From Laetmonice hystrix (Eukaryota), in the NCBI GenBank assembly GCA_965235115.1, contig OZ249438.1:30256001-30320000 (forward strand): 64,000 bases of DNA, given 5' to 3'. A program made the position numbers and the translations under genes. Shown here piece after piece: positions 20,161-64,000 of this stretch (the stretch's first letter is position 1; each line of letters starts with the position of its first letter). Below the pieces are notes generated by a model. That model was not told the origin of the DNA and made no database searches. It was given only the letters and a program-made list of their open reading frames with translations.

Positions 20161-20419
20161 CAGGGCCGGATCCAGGATTCTTAGAAAGGGGGGCGTAGCC
20201 CCTGAAGGCGCAAAGCCCCAAGGGGGGTCTGGGGGACCTCCACCCGAAAAAAATGAAAATTCATGTTTGTCTGATGCATTTTCCCGGCATCTGAGAAAAG
20301 AACTGTTCCCTTTTTTCAGGGGGCAAAGTACTGGTAAAATTCCAGTCTAAAAAATCATTACTCTGCCAAAAATAGGGGGTGTACGCCCCCCCACGCCCCC
20401 CCCCCTGGATCCGGCCCTG
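20161..20419. mobile_element. 259-bp MITE with 16-bp perfect TIRs and a 5-bp TSD (hAT-like termini)
   Basis: ATAAC|CAGGGCCGGATCCAGG ... CCTGGATCCGGCCCTG|ATAAC. Confidence 0.9.
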
Positions 20420-20706
20420 ATAACGATAATAAGAAAGTTAGAAACCCCGCTTTTCACGACGTATCTTTAGTAATGATGACTTTCTGTAACGCCCCCGCCC
20501 CCTTTGACAAACGTCTGTATGGGCTTTTGTATAGAACATTAAAAAATGCCATTTCCCAACAAACTGCATTTCCAGCAGAATCAATACTCCAACAACATTT
20601 AATGTATACATTAATATCAGCAAGAATCTGCATTTGCACACGTCTTATTGCCGCTCGCCTAGACCTGAGGTATATTTGGAAATAAGTCTAGACAGATATT
20701 ACTTAC

Positions 20707-20761
20707 TTGCCCTCCACTTCTATGGAAGATGAAGATGAAGCAAACAGCTGGTGTTACTCAC
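20707..20761 (-). other. Candidate recursive splice site and 55-nt RS-exon
   Basis: Minus strand: CCCTGAC (branch-point-like)...atttatttttacttctctAG|GTGAGTAA...GGCAA|GTAAGTA. The exon has stop codons in all three frames. Confidence 0.5.
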
Positions 20762-22082
20762 CTAGAGAAGTAAAAATAAATCACAGATCGTCAGGGATAC
20801 TGTTACAGCATTTACCAGGTAAATGATATCATATTCACCGGACATAACATATCTATATGAATTAGAATGAAGTAACTAGCATAGGAGAGTCCATGCAATA
20901 CGACTTATCTGGAAAGCAGCTTTATACCCTTGTGGACCCTATGGCCTGGCGGAAAATAAACATACAGAGTCTGCATAGAATGTTGACTTATTATTACTGG
21001 CGGCACTGTAGGGGGGATCAGCATTTCACACCTGTCACCTCGCGGTGCTTACTCCTCGGTGTACTGTCAATCATGTACAATAAAATGTCTTTTAGACAAC
21101 ACCATAGACGTAGATCAGTGTAGGTCTATGGCAATCCCCCCCCCCACACACACACACACACTCACATCGAACACGGTTATCTGGCCCAGAATTTATCAAA
21201 GTAAGGAACGTTAACAAACATCTTTGTAGCGAACGCTTTTTGTCAGTCCCTTAGTGCTCCTTATTTGGAGGGTATGCTATGCTACTTTATTCTCCTGGTC
21301 GAAGGCTGGCTAAATGATCTTGGACCTTTCTTCACCCCATACAACGAAGGTACAATGAAACAGATACTTAGTTCAGGACATGGCCGAGTTGCCCCATCTA
21401 CCTTCGGACCTCTTACATAATTGATAACCAAATTACCATTTTTCATCTGCTAACACCCCAAAATTACCTCCACAAAATGTGGAATGCTCCCCATGTGGTC
21501 AGGCCTTTGTCCACTATTTCCTATTTCGTGACCTTCCAGTAAAACATTTGAAATGTAAGCCGCTGAGTACCGGTAAACACATGGTCGTTTTGACGTGACA
21601 CAACTGCTTCAAATTAGGAAAAGGCGCAGTGGCGCACTTGAAATATTTAGCCGCCTCATGCATAATGAAAATGACTGCTTGTTCCAACCAACACTTGGTA
21701 ATTATTCCCTAGTGTCATGGCTGACGGTCTTTCTAGAAAACAGGTCCATATTGTATGGATCCGGCTTAGAAACGCAGACTCCTGCACTCGCCTCCGTTCA
21801 CACACCAAGCACACATACACGTCCACACACACACCACACCAACAGACAATATAGCACACACTCATGGATCGATTAATATGATACAGATGGAGGACAATAT
21901 CGTAGATCTATATATTTTTAAAACATAAATTTTGTGTGTGAGTTGTAGCACTAGTGACCGTTCTAACCCACCATTATGCATGTATTCAGTGCAAATTAAT
22001 GACAATAGTAGCGTTAGTGGGCGAGGATGGGCGAGCAGGCCGGCGGCTGACAAACCTGATTGATCGTTACATATTTGATGCC

Positions 22083-26743: not shown

Positions 26744-27203
26744 ATACTGCTAATATCTGACATAAATCGGTACTGTATACTGCTAGTATCTGACATAAAT
26801 CGGTACTGTATACTGCTAATATCTGACATAAATCGGTACTGTATACTGCTAATATCTGACATAAATCGGTACTGTATACTGCTAATATCTGACATAAATC
26901 GGTACTGTATACTGCTAATATCTGACATAAATCGGTACTGTATACTGCTAGTATCTGACATAAATCGGTACTGTATACTGCTAGTATCTGACATAAATCG
27001 GTCCTGTATACTGCTAATATCTGACATAAATCTGTACTGTATACTGCTAATATCTTACATAAATCTGTACTGTATACTGCTAGTATCTGACATAAATCTG
27101 TCTGCTAATATCTAACATAAATCGGTACTGTATACTGCTAGTATCTGACATAAATCTGTATTGTATACTGCTAGTATCTGACATCAATCTGTACTGTATA
27201 CTA
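26744..27203. repeat. 33-bp minisatellite, ~14 copies (ATATCTGACATAAATCGGTACTGTATACTGCTA)
   Basis: Unit cores counted at 26757, 26790, 26823 ... 27178. One unit carries an 8-nt deletion. There are no spacers. Confidence 0.97.
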
Positions 27204-28707: not shown

Positions 28708-28901
28708 NNNNNNNNNNNNNNNNNNNNNNNNNNNNNNNNNNNNNNNNNNNNNNNNNNNNNNNNNNNNNNNNNNNNNNNNNNNNNNNNNNNNNNNNNNNNN
28801 NNNNNNNNNNNNNNNNNNNNNNNNNNNNNNNNNNNNNNNNNNNNNNNNNNNNNNNNNNNNNNNNNNNNNNNNNNNNNNNNNNNNNNNNNNNNNNNNNNNN
28901 N
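28708..28901. other. Assembly gap (194 N)
   Basis: Run of N flanked by pyrimidine-rich sequence. Confidence 0.99.
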
Positions 28902-38305: not shown

Positions 38306-40320
38306 AACAAGCTTGTGAAGCTTATAGCCCCCACCACGAACTATGGATTCTTGAAAAAACGATGCACGACTTCAATTGATCTTTGAAGGGCAAAGGAAAT
38401 ATTGTCAAATGAAACTTTGTAAACTTAGTAAAGTTCTATGCAGTTGTACAGCTTGATGGCGTTATCCGGCGTAAAGATGCATGTCTCTGCAATAACTATA
38501 CAGTTATGTACAGTTTGATAGTGTTATCCGACATGAAGTGTTTTGTAGATATGCTTGACCTCGATTGACCTTTAGAGGTCAGTTATGTACAGTTTGATAG
38601 CGTTGTCTGGCGTGAACCAACTGAGTAGGGACAAATTATCTGTGGGTCCGGGGACTATACGTACTTTTCGCACGCTTGTTGCCCCTCATGCATTCTGTCA
38701 GCAAGAACGAAATCCAGAAAATGGCAGAGTTATTGCTTCGAACTTCTTTAAATCCAAGATGGCCACCAAGCCATATATTTGGCCTGTGTCCTCCTTAGAC
38801 TGTCCCTGGTTATTATGTAATGTTTCATGCAAGATTAGATGTTGTTATTTTCAACTGGTTTGGAGGTACAGGCCATTAAAATATGCATGACCTTGATTGA
38901 CCTTTCAAGGTCGCTCAAGGTCATGGAAAATGACGCCAAATGAAACTTCATATATGACTTCCTATCTATCAATAATAATAACTGTTGCCTTATCTTGCAC
39001 CGTTTTCGAGATATGAGCCAAAACAGTGTTATGGGGGGGGGAGTAAAATATTAATATGGCCGCCATGTCGCCATATTTGCTCTGATCTGGCAATACATTG
39101 GCATATACATTGCCCCTCATATACACCTTCTTTCCACCAAATTTGAAAGAAATCGGGATCGTTTTGTCCGAGTTATTGCTCCAAATGTGTTTACATCCAA
39201 GATGGCCACCACGTGGCCATTTTGACCTGTCTCATCCGTGGACTGTCCCGGATCATGATGTAATGTTTTATGCAAGATTATGTCGTTATCTTTAACTGTT
39301 TTGAAGATCCAGGCTATTGCAAATATGCATGACCTTGATTGACCTTTCAAGGTCGCTCAAGGTCATCGAAAATGGCGTCAAATGAAACGTCATATATGAC
39401 TTCCTATCTGTCAATAATAATAACTATTGCCTTATCTTGCACCGTTTTCGAGATATGAGCCAAAACAGTGTTATGGGGGGGGGTAAAATATTAATATGGC
39501 CGCCATGTCGCCATATTTGCTCTGATCTGGCAATACATTGGCATATACATTGCCCCTCATATACACCTTCTGTCCGCCAAATTTGAAAGAAATCGGGATC
39601 GTTTTGTGTGAGTTATTACTCCAAATGTGTTTACATCCAAGATGGCCACAACGCGGCCATTTTGACTGATGTCAAAAATATCTTTGACCTGCCTCATCCG
39701 TGGACTGTCACGGATCATTATGTAATGTTTCTTGCAAGATTATGTCGTTATCTTTAACTGTTTTGAAGATCCAGGCTATTGAAAATATGCATGACCTTGA
39801 TTGACCTTTCAAGGTCGCTCAAGGTCATCGAAAATGGCGCCAAATGAAACGTCCTATATGACTTCCTATCTATCAATAATAGTAACTATTGCGTCATCTT
39901 GCACCGTTTTCGAGATATAAGCCAAAACAGTGTCATTGTCGGGGTCAAGAAACAAATATGGCCGCCATCTCGCCATTTTGGATCTGAATTGAAATTTTAT
40001 TGTGATGAATATTGGCCCTCATTATGCCTCATCTCTGCACCATGTTTGAAAGAAATCGTGATTGTTTTGGCTGAGTTATTGCTCAAAATGTGTTTTCATC
40101 CAAAATGGCCGCCAAGCGGCCATTTTGAATGATATCAAAAATCTGTTTGACGTGCATCATCCTCAGTTCATCCCTGATCCTTGTGTGAAGTTTCAAAGAA
40201 ATCGACCCATACACTTCTGAGAAATCGCTGTCTACGGACATACGGACGGACGGACGGACGGCCGTACGGACGGACGGACGGAGGTCGAATGATAAGCCCC
40301 CCGTTGTGGGGGCTAATAAA
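38306..40320 (+). mobile_element. Helentron-derived non-autonomous element (HINE-like) with internal ~440-bp tandem repeats
   Basis: 5' AACAAG start. 5' subterminal TAGCCCCCACCACG pairs with 3' CGTTGTGGGGGCTA (14 bp, 1 mismatch). Repeat units start at 38754, 39197, 39637 and 40100 (partial). (ACGG)n at 40233-40282 and a 3' hairpin AGCCCCC-cgttgt-GGGGGCT. Confidence 0.8.
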
Positions 40321-45393: not shown

Positions 45394-46223
45394 TGGTGAA
45401 CATACTGAGGCTCTACCCCCCTCCCCCAACAACTGGTCTTCATCACACCTAACAACACAACCCTTCTCCGTATTCCAGTGTATACTATAGCTTAAAGGCA
45501 GGGGCAACACCCACGGCAAATAAGGTTTCGTAGACCAAATGAAACACCAGCATTTACCTCAGGGCAATAAATGCCACAATTGCGTTGTCTTAATGAAGTA
45601 ATTAACGTGTAACCGCCCGATATGTGACGCCGCTGGTTCTTACCTTGACCTTCTTGTGTGTTCATCGGAGCCGAATGCTGCACACCGCGGCGTATTGCGT
45701 AACATTACGTGTTACTCTGCTCACAGACCTTGTCTACACGATGTTTGGAGTGCCAACGTTTGTAAACGTCCGAGGTAATGAACACAAAAGCAGAACCAGC
45801 GGCGTCACACATTGGGCGTTTACACGTTAATTACTTCATTTAGACAAGGTAATTGTGGCATTTATTGCCCTGAGGTAAATGCTGGTGTTTCATTCAGTCT
45901 ACGAAACCTTATTTGCCGTGGGTGTTTTCCATCCCTTTAAAGCAAGCTCGAACAGCCTGGAATTGGTGAACATACTGAGGCTCTACCCCCCCCCCCTCCC
46001 CCCACAACTGGTCTTATTCACACCTAACAACACAACCCTTCTCCGTATTATAGTGTATACTATAGCTTAAAGCAAGCTCGAACAGCCCGGAATTGGTGAA
46101 CATACTGAGGCTCTACCCCCCCCCCCCCCCCCCCACAACTGGTCTTATTCACACCTAACAACACAACCCTTCTCCGTATTATAGTGTATACTATAGCTTA
46201 AAGCAAGCTCGAACAGCCTGGAA
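45394..46223. repeat. ~130-bp tandem repeat (partial copy, two full copies at 45941-46070 and 46071-46201, partial copy), interrupted by a MITE
   Basis: The unit AGCAAGCTCGAACAGCC.GGAATTGGTGAACATACTGAGGCTCTA(C)n...GTGTATACTATAGCTTAA recurs. Unit length varies only in the poly-C run. Confidence 0.93.
45496..45936. mobile_element. Kolobok-like MITE with ~160-bp TIRs and a TTAA TSD (441 bp)
   Basis: TTAA|AGG...CCT|TTAA. The arms 45496-45665 and 45778-45936 are near-identical inverted repeats (AACACCCACGGCAAATAAGGTTTCGTAGAC...CATTTACCTCAGGGCAATAAATGCCACAATT...). Confidence 0.88.
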
Positions 46224-59527: not shown

Positions 59528-59756
59528 CTGGACATGTGTATGCAGCGTAAAATCTTTGGCCCAGTTCACAAAATGTATGTAGCAGTAGCAGCAACGTAAC
59601 AGTAACAACATAAAACTCCAAAGAAGCATGCAGTAAAGTCGCATGAATGGTAGTCCCACAGTAAAATAAAAACGAGACCACTGAGAGAGTCGTGCAGGGA
59701 GAGTCATGCAGAGGATGCTGTTCCTCGGTTTGCTAGGGACTCAGCGCCCCACCCAC

Positions 59757-59810
59757 CTGCATCTCCAACTGTTGGATAACAGACGCCTGGTTCGTCACCA
59801 CCTGCTGAAG
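59757..59810 (-). CDS. NEK9: NEK9 exon (coiled coil): LQQVVTNQASVIQQLEMQ
   Basis: ctattttcAG acceptor and cag|GTgggt donor, 54 nt, phase 0-0, continuing the coiled coil. Read-through would give VGGALSP* (stop ends at 59733). Confidence 0.7.
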
Positions 59811-60242
59811 CTGAAAATAGACAGCAATTGGTAACCCTTACATTATAGCCGACCACAACTATTATTAGGACAGTTTCTTATCAGTAGAATGAGAGAGGTA
59901 ACGCAAGATCACTTCTTTAAAATCTTTTTAAAAAAATTAAAGAAATTTGGAAAGAAACCAAAGAATTTCACACTTTTATGCCAGGCCAATTTCTCAACTC
60001 AGTCCCTTGGTAACCTTCACTACACATCTCACAAAGTACAAAATGTACCTTGGCCCCCCAAAAAAGTGCAGAATCCTAGTCATAGGATTACCCCATGACT
60101 GTAGGGAAAGCCAGAAGTTAGAAAATATCATAGCAGAATTAACACAATACGTGTATACCGGTACTCGCTTAACGCCTGCGGATTTAGTGTGTTATTTCTA
60201 CACACGAGGGCAGCACTGATTAAATACCAGGTATCAACTGTC

Positions 60243-60256
60243 ACGCCACCTAGTGG
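60243..60256 (-). promoter_or_regulatory. CTCF-like motif CCACTAGGTGGCGT in a NEK9 intron
   Basis: 13 of 14 positions match CCASYAGRKGGCRS on the minus strand. Confidence 0.4.
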
Positions 60257-60539
60257 ACAATCAGAATCGAATCGCATCCTAACATACTCTCGTCTCCTTT
60301 CACGGACTGCGTGCCGTGTATCGCGATGCAGTCAAAATTACTTTTTTCCCTAAACCTGTACTTTGAGCAAAAATCATTTATGCACATTTCAAACCAAATA
60401 ATAAATTTGTTAATGAGATATGCTCAGGAAAACAGTTTTACTGCGTTTCTCAGCAAAGTAGAAAAAAATCAATAATGACTAATAATGGATGGTAACATTT
60501 TATGAAACATGTGGTCATGAACTTTGACCTCCGGTCTAC

Positions 60540-60644
60540 CTGTTGGTTCTGTTGCTCCAGCTGAATTATTTGCTGCCTAAGTTGTGCTATTACATCCTTC
60601 TCACATACTCCCTCTGCGCCTTCTCGTCTCTGTGAACCATCATG
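60540..60644 (-). CDS. NEK9: NEK9 exon (start of coiled coil): HDGSQRREGAEGVCEKDVIAQLRQQIIQLEQQNQQ
   Basis: atcatcctAG acceptor, cag|GTagac donor, 105 nt, phase 0-0. Heptad-like Q/L/I pattern fits the NEK9 C-terminal coiled coil. Not in the ORF track. Confidence 0.75.
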
Positions 60645-60841
60645 CTAGGATGATACACATTCAAAATGTCAGCAACACTTCATCATCTTATACTATAGCA
60701 TCTTTTAAAAATCGCAGTCTTCTGACCTCTGGTATATTCTTCGATTCTTATTCTACACATATATTCTTGGAGCAGAATTTCTTGTATTGTTCTCTCAATT
60801 TCTGAATATTATTATTCCATCACGTGAAAATATCATCTTAC

Positions 60842-61003
60842 TTGACAATCTTGGATATTCCCAGCTTCACCAGTGTTTCTCGATGAACTTAACCCACCAT
60901 GACCTTCGGACGACTGTGAATGTGGCCTTGATCTTTGTGACTCTGACCCAGAATTCTGAGAGCTGTTAGCATCCACTGGAATAAACTCGGCGTTTTCTAG
61001 CTC
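60842..61003 (-). CDS. NEK9: NEK9 exon starting ELENAEFIPVDANSSQ (NEK6/7-binding motif)
   Basis: ccccttttaccAG acceptor, caa|GTaaga donor, 162 nt, phase 0-0. ELENAEFIP is identical to the recalled human motif. Confidence 0.9.
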
Positions 61004-61171
61004 CTGGTAAAAGGGGAGAAGTATATTCATTATATAAACAAGAAGTGTAACTCATTAGTCTCTTATCCCTGATAAAAGTAGAGAAAATATATTTATGAAC
61101 GTGTTATATTCCATTAAATGTACGTGCTTAGAATGTTTCTTTATGAGTAGGTCTTGCCTCTCCCCCCCCCC

Positions 61172-61202
<31 letters not shown>

Positions 61203-61770
61203 GAAGAAATATCTGACAAATATAAAAAATCCTGTAAAATCTTGGATGTCTGCGTCATTTGAATATAAAGTTTATTGGTTGGTTATAGCATTCCTACCTG
61301 CTTCAACCATGGAGGGACTGCACTCTCACCAGAATATGTTTGTTCAGACCCTACCAAGCTACTGCTGTGGTCACCATTTTCTCTTGGAGATGCTGGGATA
61401 AACTCATCAGCAAGTTCCTGTCAGAGAATTCAGAGAACATACTTTTTATATCAGTTAAAAGATACATATAATAAATCTTCAAATTTGATATTCTTGTAAT
61501 TAGCAATAGCAATTCGGTAGAATCGATTTGAACCCTATTTTTCTGTTTAATATATTTTGAATATTTTTTGCTTCAATCACAAGCCAAACCTTGTAAAAGA
61601 CACATGCTCTACGGAATCATTATACCTAACAGAAGAGGGCAGCACAGGCGCTGTCAGAGTCAGACTATTTCTGACTCTCTCCACTAGGTGATGCCATGTC
61701 TGCAATTCCTTTGCATGCACTAGGTATTAGCTGATGCTGACATGAGAAAGCTATGTAAATAAAAACTCAC

Positions 61771-61958
61771 TGCTTTAAGCCACTCCGGCACGGAGCTCTC
61801 CCCCACTTGGCTGTGATGTGAAGAGATACCAGTCTGTTGTGAATTGATACCAGAGTCCGTTGACCCCTGTTCTCTGGGGCTAGCCTCCTGGTGGCCACTT
61901 TCAGAAGCACACAGAAACACGCTGTCTGAACTGCTTTCCGTGTCACCAGATGTCGTAG
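61771..61958 (-). CDS. NEK9: NEK9 exon (Ser-rich linker ending ...GESSVPEWLKA)
   Basis: gttctAG acceptor, gca|GTgagt donor, 188 nt, phase 1-0, open frame. The end resembles human SSSCPGWLRK. Confidence 0.85.
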
Positions 61959-62171
61959 CTAGAACAACACGTCATATCTCTTTGTTTTAACACCTTTACA
62001 TTAGTACTCGCTTTATTATATATGAAAATTGTACCATCACTGATCATCAATTTAAATATTAAGCTGATTTTGTAGAACTAATGACACTCCAAAGAATGAG
62101 TCAAACTGCATGTTTACTGGGAATCAGTTTAAACAAAAAAAGGGGAAGGAAAATTTGTCAAAAGGTTCAAC

Positions 62172-62396
62172 CTTTTACACTGGTTCCGGTGGACTTGATT
62201 GTCTTCTGAGCTAGCACCTTCTCAGCCACAATGATCGTATGCCAGTGGCGTGCAGCCATGTGTGATACTGAGTGAAGCGACCCAAAAATTGGACGAGGGT
62301 GTGACAAACATTTCCCCCGTGGCCCACTGTCTTTGTCACTGGGAATGTGACCGAGTCTACCATCCTCGCCAAGCCCCCATGAATACAACTGTTTCT
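62172..62396 (-). CDS. NEK9: NEK9 exon (last RCC1 repeat): EKQLYSWGLGEDGRLGHIPSDKDSGPRGKCLSHPRPIFGSLHSVSHMAARHWHTIIVAEKVLAQKTIKSTGT(SVK)
   Basis: tttacacAG acceptor in phase 1. The PRPIFGSLH and WHTI..EKVL..KTI motifs match human NEK9. The donor is uncertain: two weak phase-1 GT options end the exon at 62181 or 62172. Confidence 0.88.
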
Positions 62397-62542
62397 CTGT
62401 GTAAAGAAAATTATATATTTAAAAAAAGATATGCACATTTTTTTGTACTTCTTAATTATATCCACTTCAATGACTTACTTTGTCATCAACGTGTTATTTT
62501 CTTTATATTTTGTAAAAGACATTTAATCAGACCATGGCTTAC

Positions 62543-62704
62543 CTGACGTTGCTATTATTGTACAGGCGTCACCGACAGCCACCTTCTCGACTAGTTTGCC
62601 CATGAGTGGACCTCGGAGGAGGCAGACTCCCTTGTAGGCCTTGAAATCTCCCACGCCAAGCTGGCCATACTTGTTGGAGCCAAACGTCAACAGGTGGCCA
62701 TACA
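62543..62704 (-). CDS. NEK9: NEK9 exon (RCC1 repeat): [54 protein letters not shown]
   Basis: ccttctAG acceptor, cag|GTaagc donor, 162 nt, phase 1-1. Resembles human [20 protein letters not shown]...LLGGPLGGK. Confidence 0.93.
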
Positions 62705-62915
62705 CTAGAAGGACGATTATTTTTAACATGCGCGTTGGTCTTCAACAAATGAATAAATGTCCTGTGAAGTTTTAAAAAAACGTGACTGGCACTTGAACAG
62801 GCATTACACTGAGAGACTGGGTGAAACTATCGAAGACAGGATACTGATGGATAGTGACCTATAGAGGAATGAGAAATTTGGTCAATCTCCTTGATCATTT
62901 CATCTGCATACTCAC

Positions 62916-63024
62916 CATCTATTACAGCAGTGTGGGTTCGTCCAGCAGCAAGTGTAACAATGTGGTATTTACTAAGGGGCTTGACTGTGGATAATGTTGT
63001 TTTGTATGGAATATCATAGGAAAT
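62916..63024 (-). CDS. NEK9: NEK9 exon: ISYDIPYKTTLSTVKPLSKYHIVTLAAGRTHTAVID
   Basis: tttgtttccAG acceptor, g|GTgagt donor, 109 nt, phase 0-1. Resembles human [33 protein letters not shown]. Confidence 0.92.
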
Positions 63025-63187
63025 CTGGAAACAAAGAAATGGGCAGATTTTAACACTTACTTGTCTCAAAGTCGAAGGCAACAGTACACATGTAAATAAT
63101 TTTTTTATGTTTCATGTTGTTCATTAAGGGTATCATAAATCCTGAACGCGTTTCCAACAAAGACTACAATGACAGTTTCCATTTCAC

Positions 63188-63396
63188 CTGTTCCTTCCGT
63201 TTGTGCAGGCCCTGTGCAGAACTATTGAAGCCCAGTTTATTATTCTCGTTACTGCCACAGGCCTGGACCCGACCATTGGTGTTGATGAGGAACGTGCCAT
63301 CCGACCCTCCAATCACTGACTTGATGGCATGTCGGCCTCGTGTCTGCACTTTCTGAGGTGTGCCATGATCTTCTTCTGAACCCAAGCCTAACCGAC
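63188..63396 (-). CDS. NEK9: NEK9 exon (RCC1 repeat): GRLGLGSEEDHGTPQKVQTRGRHAIKSVIGGSDGTFLINTNGRVQACGSNENNKLGFNSSAQGLHKRKEQ
   Basis: ttacAG acceptor, cag|GTgaaa donor, 209 nt, phase 1-0. Resembles human RLGLDSEEDYYTPQKV...GCDGTFLL...ACGLNEFNKLG. Confidence 0.93.
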
Positions 63397-63716
63397 CTGT
63401 AATTAATGCCACATCCAATTCACTATCTACTGCTTTTATGTATGTATCTTAATCCTGAAAGTTTCTACAATTTACTACTAGGCCAGTAAGCAGGATTCGA
63501 AATTGAGAGATAAACACTACATCTGTAAAAGTAGGCTCATGACCATTTCAAACCAGTGTAACTTAGTGGGTGCAAATTAAAGAACTATATCCCATCTACC
63601 AACTCTCTCTCCTATATAAAGATTCTGATGATTTCAGAAATTCTTGATCATAACGAGAGTTTGTCTGTTCGGACAACTACTACTGATTGGTAATATGTAT
63701 GGTTGATGTGAGTTAC

Positions 63717-63917
63717 CAAACTCGCCGCAGCCCCAAGTGTAAACCTCCGAGTCTGCGGTCAATGCCAAGACGTGGGCGTCACCACAGGACAGCTGAACGA
63801 CCCGCCGTGAACCAAACGTTTCTATGAGGACGGGTGTACAAACCTCGTCCCCCTCCGTGTTACCACAACCAAGGCAGCCGTAGTAATCAGAGCCAAATGA
63901 ATAAGCTGCTCCTTCAT
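63717..63917 (-). CDS. NEK9: NEK9 internal exon (RCC1 repeats): DEGAAYSFGSDYYGCLGCGNTEGDEVCTPVLIETFGSRRVVQLSCGDAHVLALTADSEVYTWGCGEFG
   Basis: Bounded by ttgaccAG and GTaact, 201 nt, phase 1-1, open frame. Not in the ORF track. Closely resembles human NEK9 DEGQLYAFGSDYYGCMG...[26 protein letters not shown] (recalled). Confidence 0.93.
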
Positions 63918-64000
63918 CTGGTCAACAAATCAACCAAAACTTACATTCATTTAATCAAGTCAAACGCTGCATAACTATGAGGCAATCTGTTTTGTTTGAA

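What the first reader, a model, noticed from the sequence alone, without database searches (positions are those of the whole stretch)
20700..20800. Candidate recursive splice site with a poison RS-exon in an apparent gene desert
Seen on the minus strand: a branch-point-like CCCTGAC ~30 nt upstream, a long pyrimidine tract (atttatttttacttctct), AG immediately followed by a perfect donor GTGAGT, and a second perfect donor (CAA|GTAAGT) 55 nt later. The 55-nt interval has stops in all three frames. Known: recursive splicing uses juxtaposed 3'/5' sites (AG|GT); in vertebrates it is defined through a downstream cryptic RS-exon that often carries premature stops, and it is best documented in Drosophila and vertebrates. 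Inference: this region lies in a very long intron of an unannotated minus-strand gene that is removed stepwise, which would extend RS-exon architecture to another animal lineage.
Basis: partly seen in the sequence, partly recalled or inferred. Interest (0 to 1): 0.7.

Follow-up and report, generated by a model that had tools for sequence, protein, structure and literature searches.

The report
Predicted recursive splice site, no host
The "intron end fused to intron start" signal with a 55-base decoy exon is really there and belongs to a type of site that this invertebrate genome holds more often than chance allows. No gene could be shown to run across it and no RNA data exist, so whether it is used stays about even odds.

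Summary
On the minus strand lie CTGAC, a 17-nt pyrimidine tract, AG|GTGAGT (20763-20756), a 55-nt interval with stops in all three frames, then CAA|GTAAGT. The DNA is single copy.

- **Genome-wide counts:** the bare core Y7-AG|GTRAGT is not enriched (391 vs 328 in the backwards control). A second GTRAGT 35-65 nt downstream is: about 25 unique sites against 4-10 expected, and only 3-11 at neighbouring spacings. Adding a CTRAY branch point leaves 6 unique sites, this one included, against 0 in the control.
- **Context:** the "gene desert" is a roughly 174-kb coding-free spacer between two minus-strand genes. A NEK9-like gene ends near 59.7 kb of the window. A Reph-like gene has its ATG 136 kb downstream of the site. 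These two genes sit 3.4 kb apart in the nemertean Lineus.
- **Host:** none was found. The Reph-like gene seems to have its own proximal CpG-rich promoter. No companion sites turned up in the sequence held.
- **Missing data:** no RNA runs and no relative's DNA were available.

My verdict is about 50% a used recursive-splicing-type site in an unidentified transcript and about 35% chance. The scan has already flagged the same architecture at other loci of this genome.

The parts
20790..20794 (-). Branch-point-like CTGAC (fits CTRAY); its A lies about 29 nt upstream of the AG
   Evidence: part of the pattern that has 6 unique genome hits against 0 in the control
20764..20780 (-). Pyrimidine tract TTTATTTTTACTTCTCT (15 of 17 are Y)
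20762..20763 (-). Candidate 3' splice-site AG
20756..20761 (-). Candidate ratchet-point donor GTGAGT, directly after the AG. Predicted U1 pairing is -12.2 kcal/mol with its genomic TAG, or -13.8 behind a generic CAG exon end
20707..20761 (-). Candidate 55-nt cryptic RS-exon with a stop in each frame
   Evidence: the length falls in the enriched 41-71 nt class
20701..20706 (-). RS-exon donor GTAAGT, preceded by CAA. Predicted U1 pairing is -7.2 kcal/mol, weaker than the ratchet donor

Best explanation
The site is a recursive-splicing ratchet point of the fly and vertebrate kind, on the minus strand.

The proposed mechanism has three steps.
1. A long minus-strand primary transcript is spliced from an upstream donor to the AG at 20762. 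The site is recognised by exon definition through the 55-nt cryptic exon and its GTAAGT donor at 20706.
2. That first splice regenerates a strong donor, exon end|GTGAGTAA.
3. The regenerated donor out-competes the weaker CAA|GTAAGT donor, so the 55 nt are removed together with the downstream part of the intron.

What is shown: the sequence anatomy, that the DNA is single copy, and that this architecture is over-represented in the genome.

What is inferred: that a transcript runs here at all, which transcript it is, and that the site is used.

The most plausible host is a transcript from a distal promoter of the Reph-like gene. Its ATG exon lies 136 kb downstream on the same strand and carries an acceptor-like site 117 nt before the ATG. 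An unannotated non-coding RNA is the alternative host.
For: **Anatomy.** The full anatomy is present.

**Genome-wide counts, each with the tool's backwards-read control:**
- Core plus a second GTRAGT at N35-65 gives 45 hits, about 25 of them unique once a C12 tandem array, a dispersed repeat and two tandem duplications are removed. The control gives 10, and about 3.6 are expected from the local GTRAGT frequency.
- The same core with the second donor at N66-96 gives about 3 unique hits. At N4-34 it gives 11, four of them low complexity. The controls give 10 and 8. The excess is therefore specific to decoy exons of roughly 41-71 nt, the size known for RS-exons (about 50 nt; PMC8605326).
- Adding CTRAY 14-34 nt upstream leaves 9 hits, 6 unique including this one, against 0 in the control.
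- One of the other five (C3:8341122) sits beside two further same-strand cores, at 8391798 and 8421766.

**Donor strength.** The ratchet donor is predicted to be stronger than the RS-exon donor, as the fly competition rule requires (PMC8605326).

**Orientation and composition.**
- The site is in sense orientation to both flanking genes.
- The + strand shows C>G skew all through the window, as over the minus-strand NEK9-like gene.
- There is a mild deficit of AATAAA and a mild excess of GTRAGT on the minus strand.

**Copy number.** The site does not lie in a repeat.
Against: **No host gene.**
- 134 minus-strand ORFs of at least 62 aa across window 1-59 kb and L009-L011 have no credible Pfam match. 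Only two isolated hits near E 0.005-0.009 appeared, which is chance level for that many ORFs.
- The longer window ORFs also have none.
- The NEK9-like CDS ends near 59.7 kb, and its CpG-depleted body ends near 58 kb.

**The Reph-like gene seems to start near its own ATG.**
- A 5-kb stretch with CpG observed/expected near 1 surrounds and precedes its ATG exon.
- In Owenia and Lineus the gene starts within 1.6-3.4 kb of its upstream neighbour.

**No companion sites.** None was found in the roughly 70 kb I hold of the 136 kb between the site and the Reph-like ATG, even with relaxed criteria. No other Y7-AG|GTRAGT core lies within about 400 kb on C3. Other loci of this genome are reported to carry series of 2-5 sites.

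**Composition is not a clean sign of transcription.** GC skew is near zero in L006-L008. It flips sign as a regional domain that includes an opposite-strand ankyrin/SOCS-box (ASB-like) gene.

**The core alone is at chance frequency**.

**No RNA and no conservation data** were available.
Confidence: 0.5

Rival explanations
1. The motif arose by chance in untranscribed or unspliced intergenic DNA. The spacer between the NEK9-like and Reph-like genes expanded from a few kb to about 174 kb, and one splice-like string arose in it with no function.
For: - The core Y7-AG|GTRAGT occurs about 300-390 times in the genome against 328 in the control.
- Between 4 and 10 of the roughly 25 sites with a second donor are expected by chance.
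- No host exons were found.
- This is a lone site.
- Both flanking genes appear complete without it.
- The U1/PAS strand asymmetry in the spacer is about 1.3-fold, much weaker than the 2-3-fold over the known genes.
Against: - With the branch point included, the control yields 0 sites against 6 unique. The chance expectation for such a complete site in the whole genome is below 1.
- The spacing-specific excess cannot be explained by local composition.
Confidence: 0.35
2. The interval is an ordinary, or alternatively included, 55-nt non-coding exon. It would belong to an unannotated transcript, either a lncRNA or a distal 5'UTR exon of the Reph-like gene. It would be kept in the mature RNA, and the GTGAGT at its start would be incidental or only occasionally used.
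For: The acceptor and the GTAAGT donor are both good. Expressed RS-exons exist in flies and are common in mammals (PMC8605326, PMC6224609).
Against: A perfect GTRAGT at the first six bases of an ordinary exon is expected in about 4 of 10,000 exons, from the local frequency. The ratchet donor is predicted to be much stronger than the exon's own donor, which favours skipping.
Confidence: 0.08
3. AG|GTGAGT is the donor of a short first exon. The exon would start about 30 nt downstream of the TATAAA at 20926-20921, with GTAAGT at 20706 as an alternative donor.
For: TATAAA lies 165 nt upstream on the same strand.
Against: - TATAAA is expected about once per 1.7 kb by composition (inference).
- There is no CpG-rich or other promoter signal at 20.5-21.5 kb; CpG observed/expected is 0.5-0.7 there.
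- This reading leaves the branch point, the 17-nt pyrimidine tract and the AG unexplained.
Confidence: 0.05

Closest known systems
Drosophila intronic ratchet points with cryptic RS-exons (Hatton 1998; Duff 2015; Joseph 2018; as summarised in PMC8605326)
   Same: - Pyrimidine tract and AG fused to GTRAGT.
- A short cryptic exon of about 50 nt with its own downstream donor.
- Exon content out of frame.
- The ratchet donor is predicted to be stronger than the exon donor.
   Different: - Fly sites sit in identified long introns, are ultraconserved, and have RNA support. Here the host intron, conservation and RNA are all unknown.
- The acceptor here is TAG rather than the preferred CAG.
- It is a lone site, not one of a series.
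Vertebrate recursive splice sites defined through RS-exons (Sibley 2015; EJC-repressed RS-exons, PMC6224609)
   Same: Exon-definition logic, with a cryptic exon that would carry premature stops if included.
   Different: The vertebrate cases lie in introns of more than 150 kb in named neuronal genes. Here no gene is assigned.
Predicted ratchet points at other loci of this same genome
   Same: Same genome, same motif, and decoy exons of about 50 nt. One of my six full-architecture hits lies next to the reported NCX site.
   Different: Those sites are reported inside identified long introns, often in same-strand series. This one has neither a host nor companions. All of them, this one included, lack RNA evidence.

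Membership tests
Recursive splice site (ratchet point) with RS-exon | Juxtaposed 3' and 5' splice sites: pyrimidine tract, AG|GTRAGT | tested here: met
   TTTATTTTTACTTCTCTAG|GTGAGT at 20780-20756, minus strand
Recursive splice site (ratchet point) with RS-exon | Branch-point consensus 18-40 nt upstream of the AG | tested here: met
   CTGAC at 20794-20790. This is a sequence-level match only; lariat use is untested
Recursive splice site (ratchet point) with RS-exon | Short cryptic exon of about 50 nt ending in a second donor | tested here: met
   55 nt followed by GTAAGT. This spacing class is enriched genome-wide
Recursive splice site (ratchet point) with RS-exon | Regenerated ratchet donor competes successfully with the RS-exon donor | tested here: inconclusive
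   Predicted U1 duplex is -12.2 to -13.8 against -7.2 kcal/mol. The real -3 to -1 bases come from an unknown upstream exon
Recursive splice site (ratchet point) with RS-exon | Lies on the sense strand within a long intron of a transcribed gene | tested here: inconclusive
   No flanking exons of one gene were found. The site lies between the NEK9-like 3' end and the Reph-like ATG, in sense to both. Non-coding exons cannot be detected with these tools
Recursive splice site (ratchet point) with RS-exon | Conservation of the AG|GT core in related species | not testable with these tools
   The congener contig carries no DNA. The ORF-level search across the site was blank. The genome has no relatives in the genome collection
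Recursive splice site (ratchet point) with RS-exon | RNA evidence: junction to the ratchet point, saw-tooth coverage, lariats | not testable with these tools
   Only three DNA runs of one sample hold the stretch, and no RNA run does

The most novel reading that the evidence does not exclude
The ancestral 3-kb spacer between NEK9 and Reph (as in Lineus) has grown in this probable annelid into a roughly 170-kb first intron of the Reph-like gene, transcribed from a distal promoter next to NEK9. This ratchet point, about 35-39 kb in, would be the first step of its stepwise removal. Together with the spacing-specific genome-wide excess, it would show that recursive splicing through RS-exons operates in Spiralia, including in 5'UTR introns invisible to coding-based annotation.
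Probability: 0.25. Interest if true: 0.55.

Novelty: new member of a known kind. Interest (0 to 1): 0.35.

Why it matters
If used, the site would add to the evidence that recursive splicing through decoy exons is not confined to flies and vertebrates but also serves the very long introns of a spiralian. I found no paper in the held library linking recursive splicing to annelids.

The more useful result here is the genome-wide test. The bare AG|GT core is at chance frequency. Only the core together with a second donor 35-65 nt downstream, and with a branch point, is enriched. That gives a concrete short list of six sites for RNA validation.

This particular site is the weakest-anchored of those the scan has flagged in this genome, because it has no host gene.

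Tried and rejected
**RNA and relatives**
- RNA evidence: the run search found only three DNA runs of one sample. Laying them confirmed the assembly but nothing more.
A search with the 44-aa ORF that spans the whole site found nothing, and an earlier try was too short. These blanks say nothing either way.

**Search for a host gene**
- Pfam on the longest window ORFs, on flank ORFs, and on 134 minus-strand ORFs in three batches gave nothing credible in the spacer.
- A home-made codon log-odds score discriminated poorly. It did point to the Reph-like exons.
Only alternate 10-kb blocks of the ±200 kb flanks were seen.

**Readings I rejected**
- The NEK9-like gene as host: its C-terminal PPWL-motif and coiled-coil exons lie at 61.96-59.7 kb, and homologues end a few residues after that.
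- Owenia's 83-kb Reph-like gene as a precedent for a giant 5' intron: the long intron there is at the 3' end and may be an annotation join.
- GC skew as proof of transcription: it behaves as a regional domain.

**Other blanks**
- Rfam and tRNA scans were empty.
- The literature search for Reph plus recursive splicing found nothing.

Full report
**1. Observation**

Read on the minus strand, the window shows this string:

...CCCTGAC GATCTGTGA TTTATTTTTACTTCTCT AG|GTGAGTAACACC...GGGCAA|GTAAGTAA

- CTGAC lies at 20794-20790.
- The pyrimidine tract lies at 20780-20764.
- The AG is at 20763-20762.
- GTGAGT lies at 20761-20756.
- GTAAGT lies at 20706-20701.
- The 55-nt interval between the two donors has a stop in each frame.

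The 701 bp around the site occur once in the 627-Mb genome. Contigs of three DNA runs of one sample cover 20391-21130 at single-copy depth with no differences in 20700-20800. A roughly 230-bp element at 20190-20420 has about 1000-fold depth and is a separate high-copy repeat.

**2. Is it more than chance?**

In the window there are five AG|GTRAGT sites on both strands, about what composition predicts. Only this one has 16 of 20 pyrimidines upstream. In the 264 kb I hold, it is the only site with a good tract and a second donor, even under relaxed rules.

Genome-wide, I used the pattern search with its built-in control, which reads the pattern backwards.

| Pattern | Forward hits | Unique hits | Control |
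|---|---|---|---|
| Y7-AG|GTRAGT core | 391, including about 85 copies in two tandem arrays | about 300 | 328 |
| Core + GTRAGT at N35-65 | 45 | about 25 | 10 |
| Core + GTRAGT at N66-96 | 65 | about 3 | 10 |
| Core + GTRAGT at N4-34 | 76 | 11 (four are low complexity) | 8 |
| CTRAY N14-34 + core + GTRAGT at N35-65 | 9 | 6, this site included | 0 |
| CTRAY N14-34 + core only | 34 | 30 | 17 |

- The core alone is at background frequency.
- For the N35-65 class I removed 14 copies of a C12 array, 4 copies of a dispersed repeat and 2 tandem duplications. About 3.6 hits are expected from the local GTRAGT frequency.
- The excess is thus specific to decoy exons of roughly 41-71 nt. That is the size reported for fly RS-exons (about 50 nt; PMC8605326).
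- On sequence features alone, most sites of this complete class should be non-random.
- The pattern was shaped on this site, so the fair count is five other sites against fewer than one expected.

I find 3-7-fold for the second donor, and more with the branch point.

**3. Surroundings**

The window is not empty.

The NEK9-like gene lies on the minus strand.
- RCC1-repeat exons lie at 63917-62170. Homologues of 900-1000 aa carry a kinase plus RCC1 repeats.
- Kinase exons lie in L012.
- The C-terminal PPWL-motif and coiled-coil exons lie at 61.96-59.7 kb.
- Its CpG-depleted body ends near 58 kb.

The Reph-like gene lies 136-138 kb downstream of the site in the minus sense.
- Its exons are L006:4083-4007, 3581-3507 and 2817-2065.
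- The closest named homologue is from the annelid Paralvinella. One insect homologue is named Reph.
- In the nemertean Lineus longissimus the NEK9-like and Reph-like genes are adjacent, on the same strand and 3.4 kb apart. The two genes here are therefore conserved neighbours whose spacer has grown to about 174 kb.

Nothing in that spacer looks coding. I saw only alternate 10-kb blocks of the flanks.

**4. Is there a host transcript?**

For:
- The site is in sense to both neighbours.
- The + strand has C>G skew all through the window and into L009-L011, as over the NEK9-like gene.
- The minus strand has somewhat fewer AATAAA and more GTRAGT (83 vs 64 and 36 vs 45). The direction matches that seen over the NEK9-like and FEZ genes.
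- The Reph-like ATG exon is preceded, 117 nt upstream, by an acceptor-like TTGGTTTTGTTCCAG.

Against:
- The strand asymmetries are weak.
- The skew is near zero in L006-L008. It flips as a block at 30.37-30.38 Mb, and that block includes an opposite-strand ankyrin/SOCS-box (ASB-like) gene. It may be regional rather than transcriptional.
- The Reph-like ATG exon sits in a 5-kb stretch with CpG observed/expected near 1, carrying CCAAT and GC-box motifs. This suggests a proximal promoter.
- In Owenia and Lineus the gene starts within 1.6-3.4 kb of its neighbour.
- There are no companion ratchet sites.

No RNA runs exist in the index.

**5. Mechanism and odds**

If used, the site would work as in flies.
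1. The 55-nt decoy exon is defined by its acceptor and its GTAAGT donor.
2. It is spliced to the upstream exon.
3. The regenerated donor |GTGAGTAA (predicted U1 pairing -12 to -14 kcal/mol) out-competes CAA|GTAAGT (-7.2). The decoy then leaves with the rest of the intron (PMC8605326).

Sequence statistics alone would put the odds near 7 to 1 in favour. The absence of any host, the probable proximal promoter of the only candidate host, and the lack of companion sites pull this down.

| Reading | Probability |
|---|---|
| Used recursive-type site | about 0.5 |
| Chance | about 0.35 |
| Retained non-coding exon | about 0.08 |
| First-exon donor behind the TATAAA at 20926 | about 0.05 |

**6. Comparison and novelty**

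The kind of system is known. Fly ratchet points with RS-exons are described in PMC8605326 and the 2014 bioRxiv preprint 10.1101/006163. Vertebrate RS-exons are described in PMC6224609.

The sequence features of membership are met. Location in a long intron is inconclusive. Conservation and RNA use could not be tested.

I found no paper in the held library on recursive splicing in annelids. The scan itself has already raised the same idea at several better-anchored loci of this genome. I therefore rate this as a possible new member of a known kind, of modest interest.

Noticed in passing
window 59700-63936 (minus) and L012:134-9343 (minus): A NEK9-like gene with kinase exons in L012 and RCC1-repeat exons at 63917-62170. 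Three exons carrying a PPWL..EL..AEFIP motif lie at about 61.96-60.84 kb, and coiled-coil exons at 60.64-59.7 kb. Its body is CpG-depleted (observed/expected 0.35-0.66) down to about 58 kb. The window is therefore not a pure gene desert.
   Followed up: yes
L006:2065-4083 (minus) = C3:30138065-30140083: A conserved, Pfam-less Reph-like gene. Homologues occur across annelids, molluscs, brachiopods, nemerteans, chelicerates, echinoderms, hemichordates and amphioxus, and one cockroach entry is named Reph. A 5-kb island with CpG observed/expected near 1 lies over and upstream of the ATG exon.
   Followed up: yes
L022 (Lineus longissimus OU342994.1) against window and L006: Microsynteny is conserved: a NEK9-like gene is followed on the same strand by the Reph-like gene. 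They are 3.4 kb apart in the nemertean and about 174 kb apart here, a roughly 50-fold spacer expansion.
   Followed up: partly
window 20190-20420: A roughly 230-bp element with about 1000-fold the single-copy contig depth and many variant copies (a SINE- or MITE-like high-copy repeat). It lies about 290 nt downstream (minus sense) of the second donor.
   Followed up: no
G000:C12:26313499-26316374 and C1:17674713-17675402: Tandem arrays whose roughly 37-nt and 75-nt units each carry a perfect pyrimidine-AG|GTAAGT. They inflate raw motif counts, and an earlier scan note describes similar splice-donor minisatellites.
   Followed up: partly
G000:C3:8341142, 8391798, 8421766 (+ strand): Three same-strand Y7-AG|GTRAGT cores spaced 50 and 30 kb apart. 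The first also has a branch point and a second donor.
   Followed up: no
L014 to L015 (C3: about 30.37-30.38 Mb): GC skew changes sign from negative to positive as a block. Minus-strand genes lie mostly to the left and plus-strand genes (zinc-finger ORF, FEZ) to the right, but a minus-strand ankyrin/SOCS-box gene sits in the positive block. This looks like a regional, possibly replication-linked, skew domain.
   Followed up: partly
window 26744-27202; 38727-40128; 45937-46223; 28708-28901: A 33-bp minisatellite (14 copies), a 462-bp tandem repeat (3 copies), and a 131-bp duplication with a poly-C run.
   Followed up: no
L015:3175-5406 (+); L016:8339-8986 (-); L019:1405-1992 (+): A 744-codon open frame, Ser/Thr-rich with C2H2-like zinc-finger motifs and no Pfam hit. 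Also the last exon of an ankyrin plus SOCS-box gene, and a FEZ/UNC-76-like exon.
   Followed up: partly
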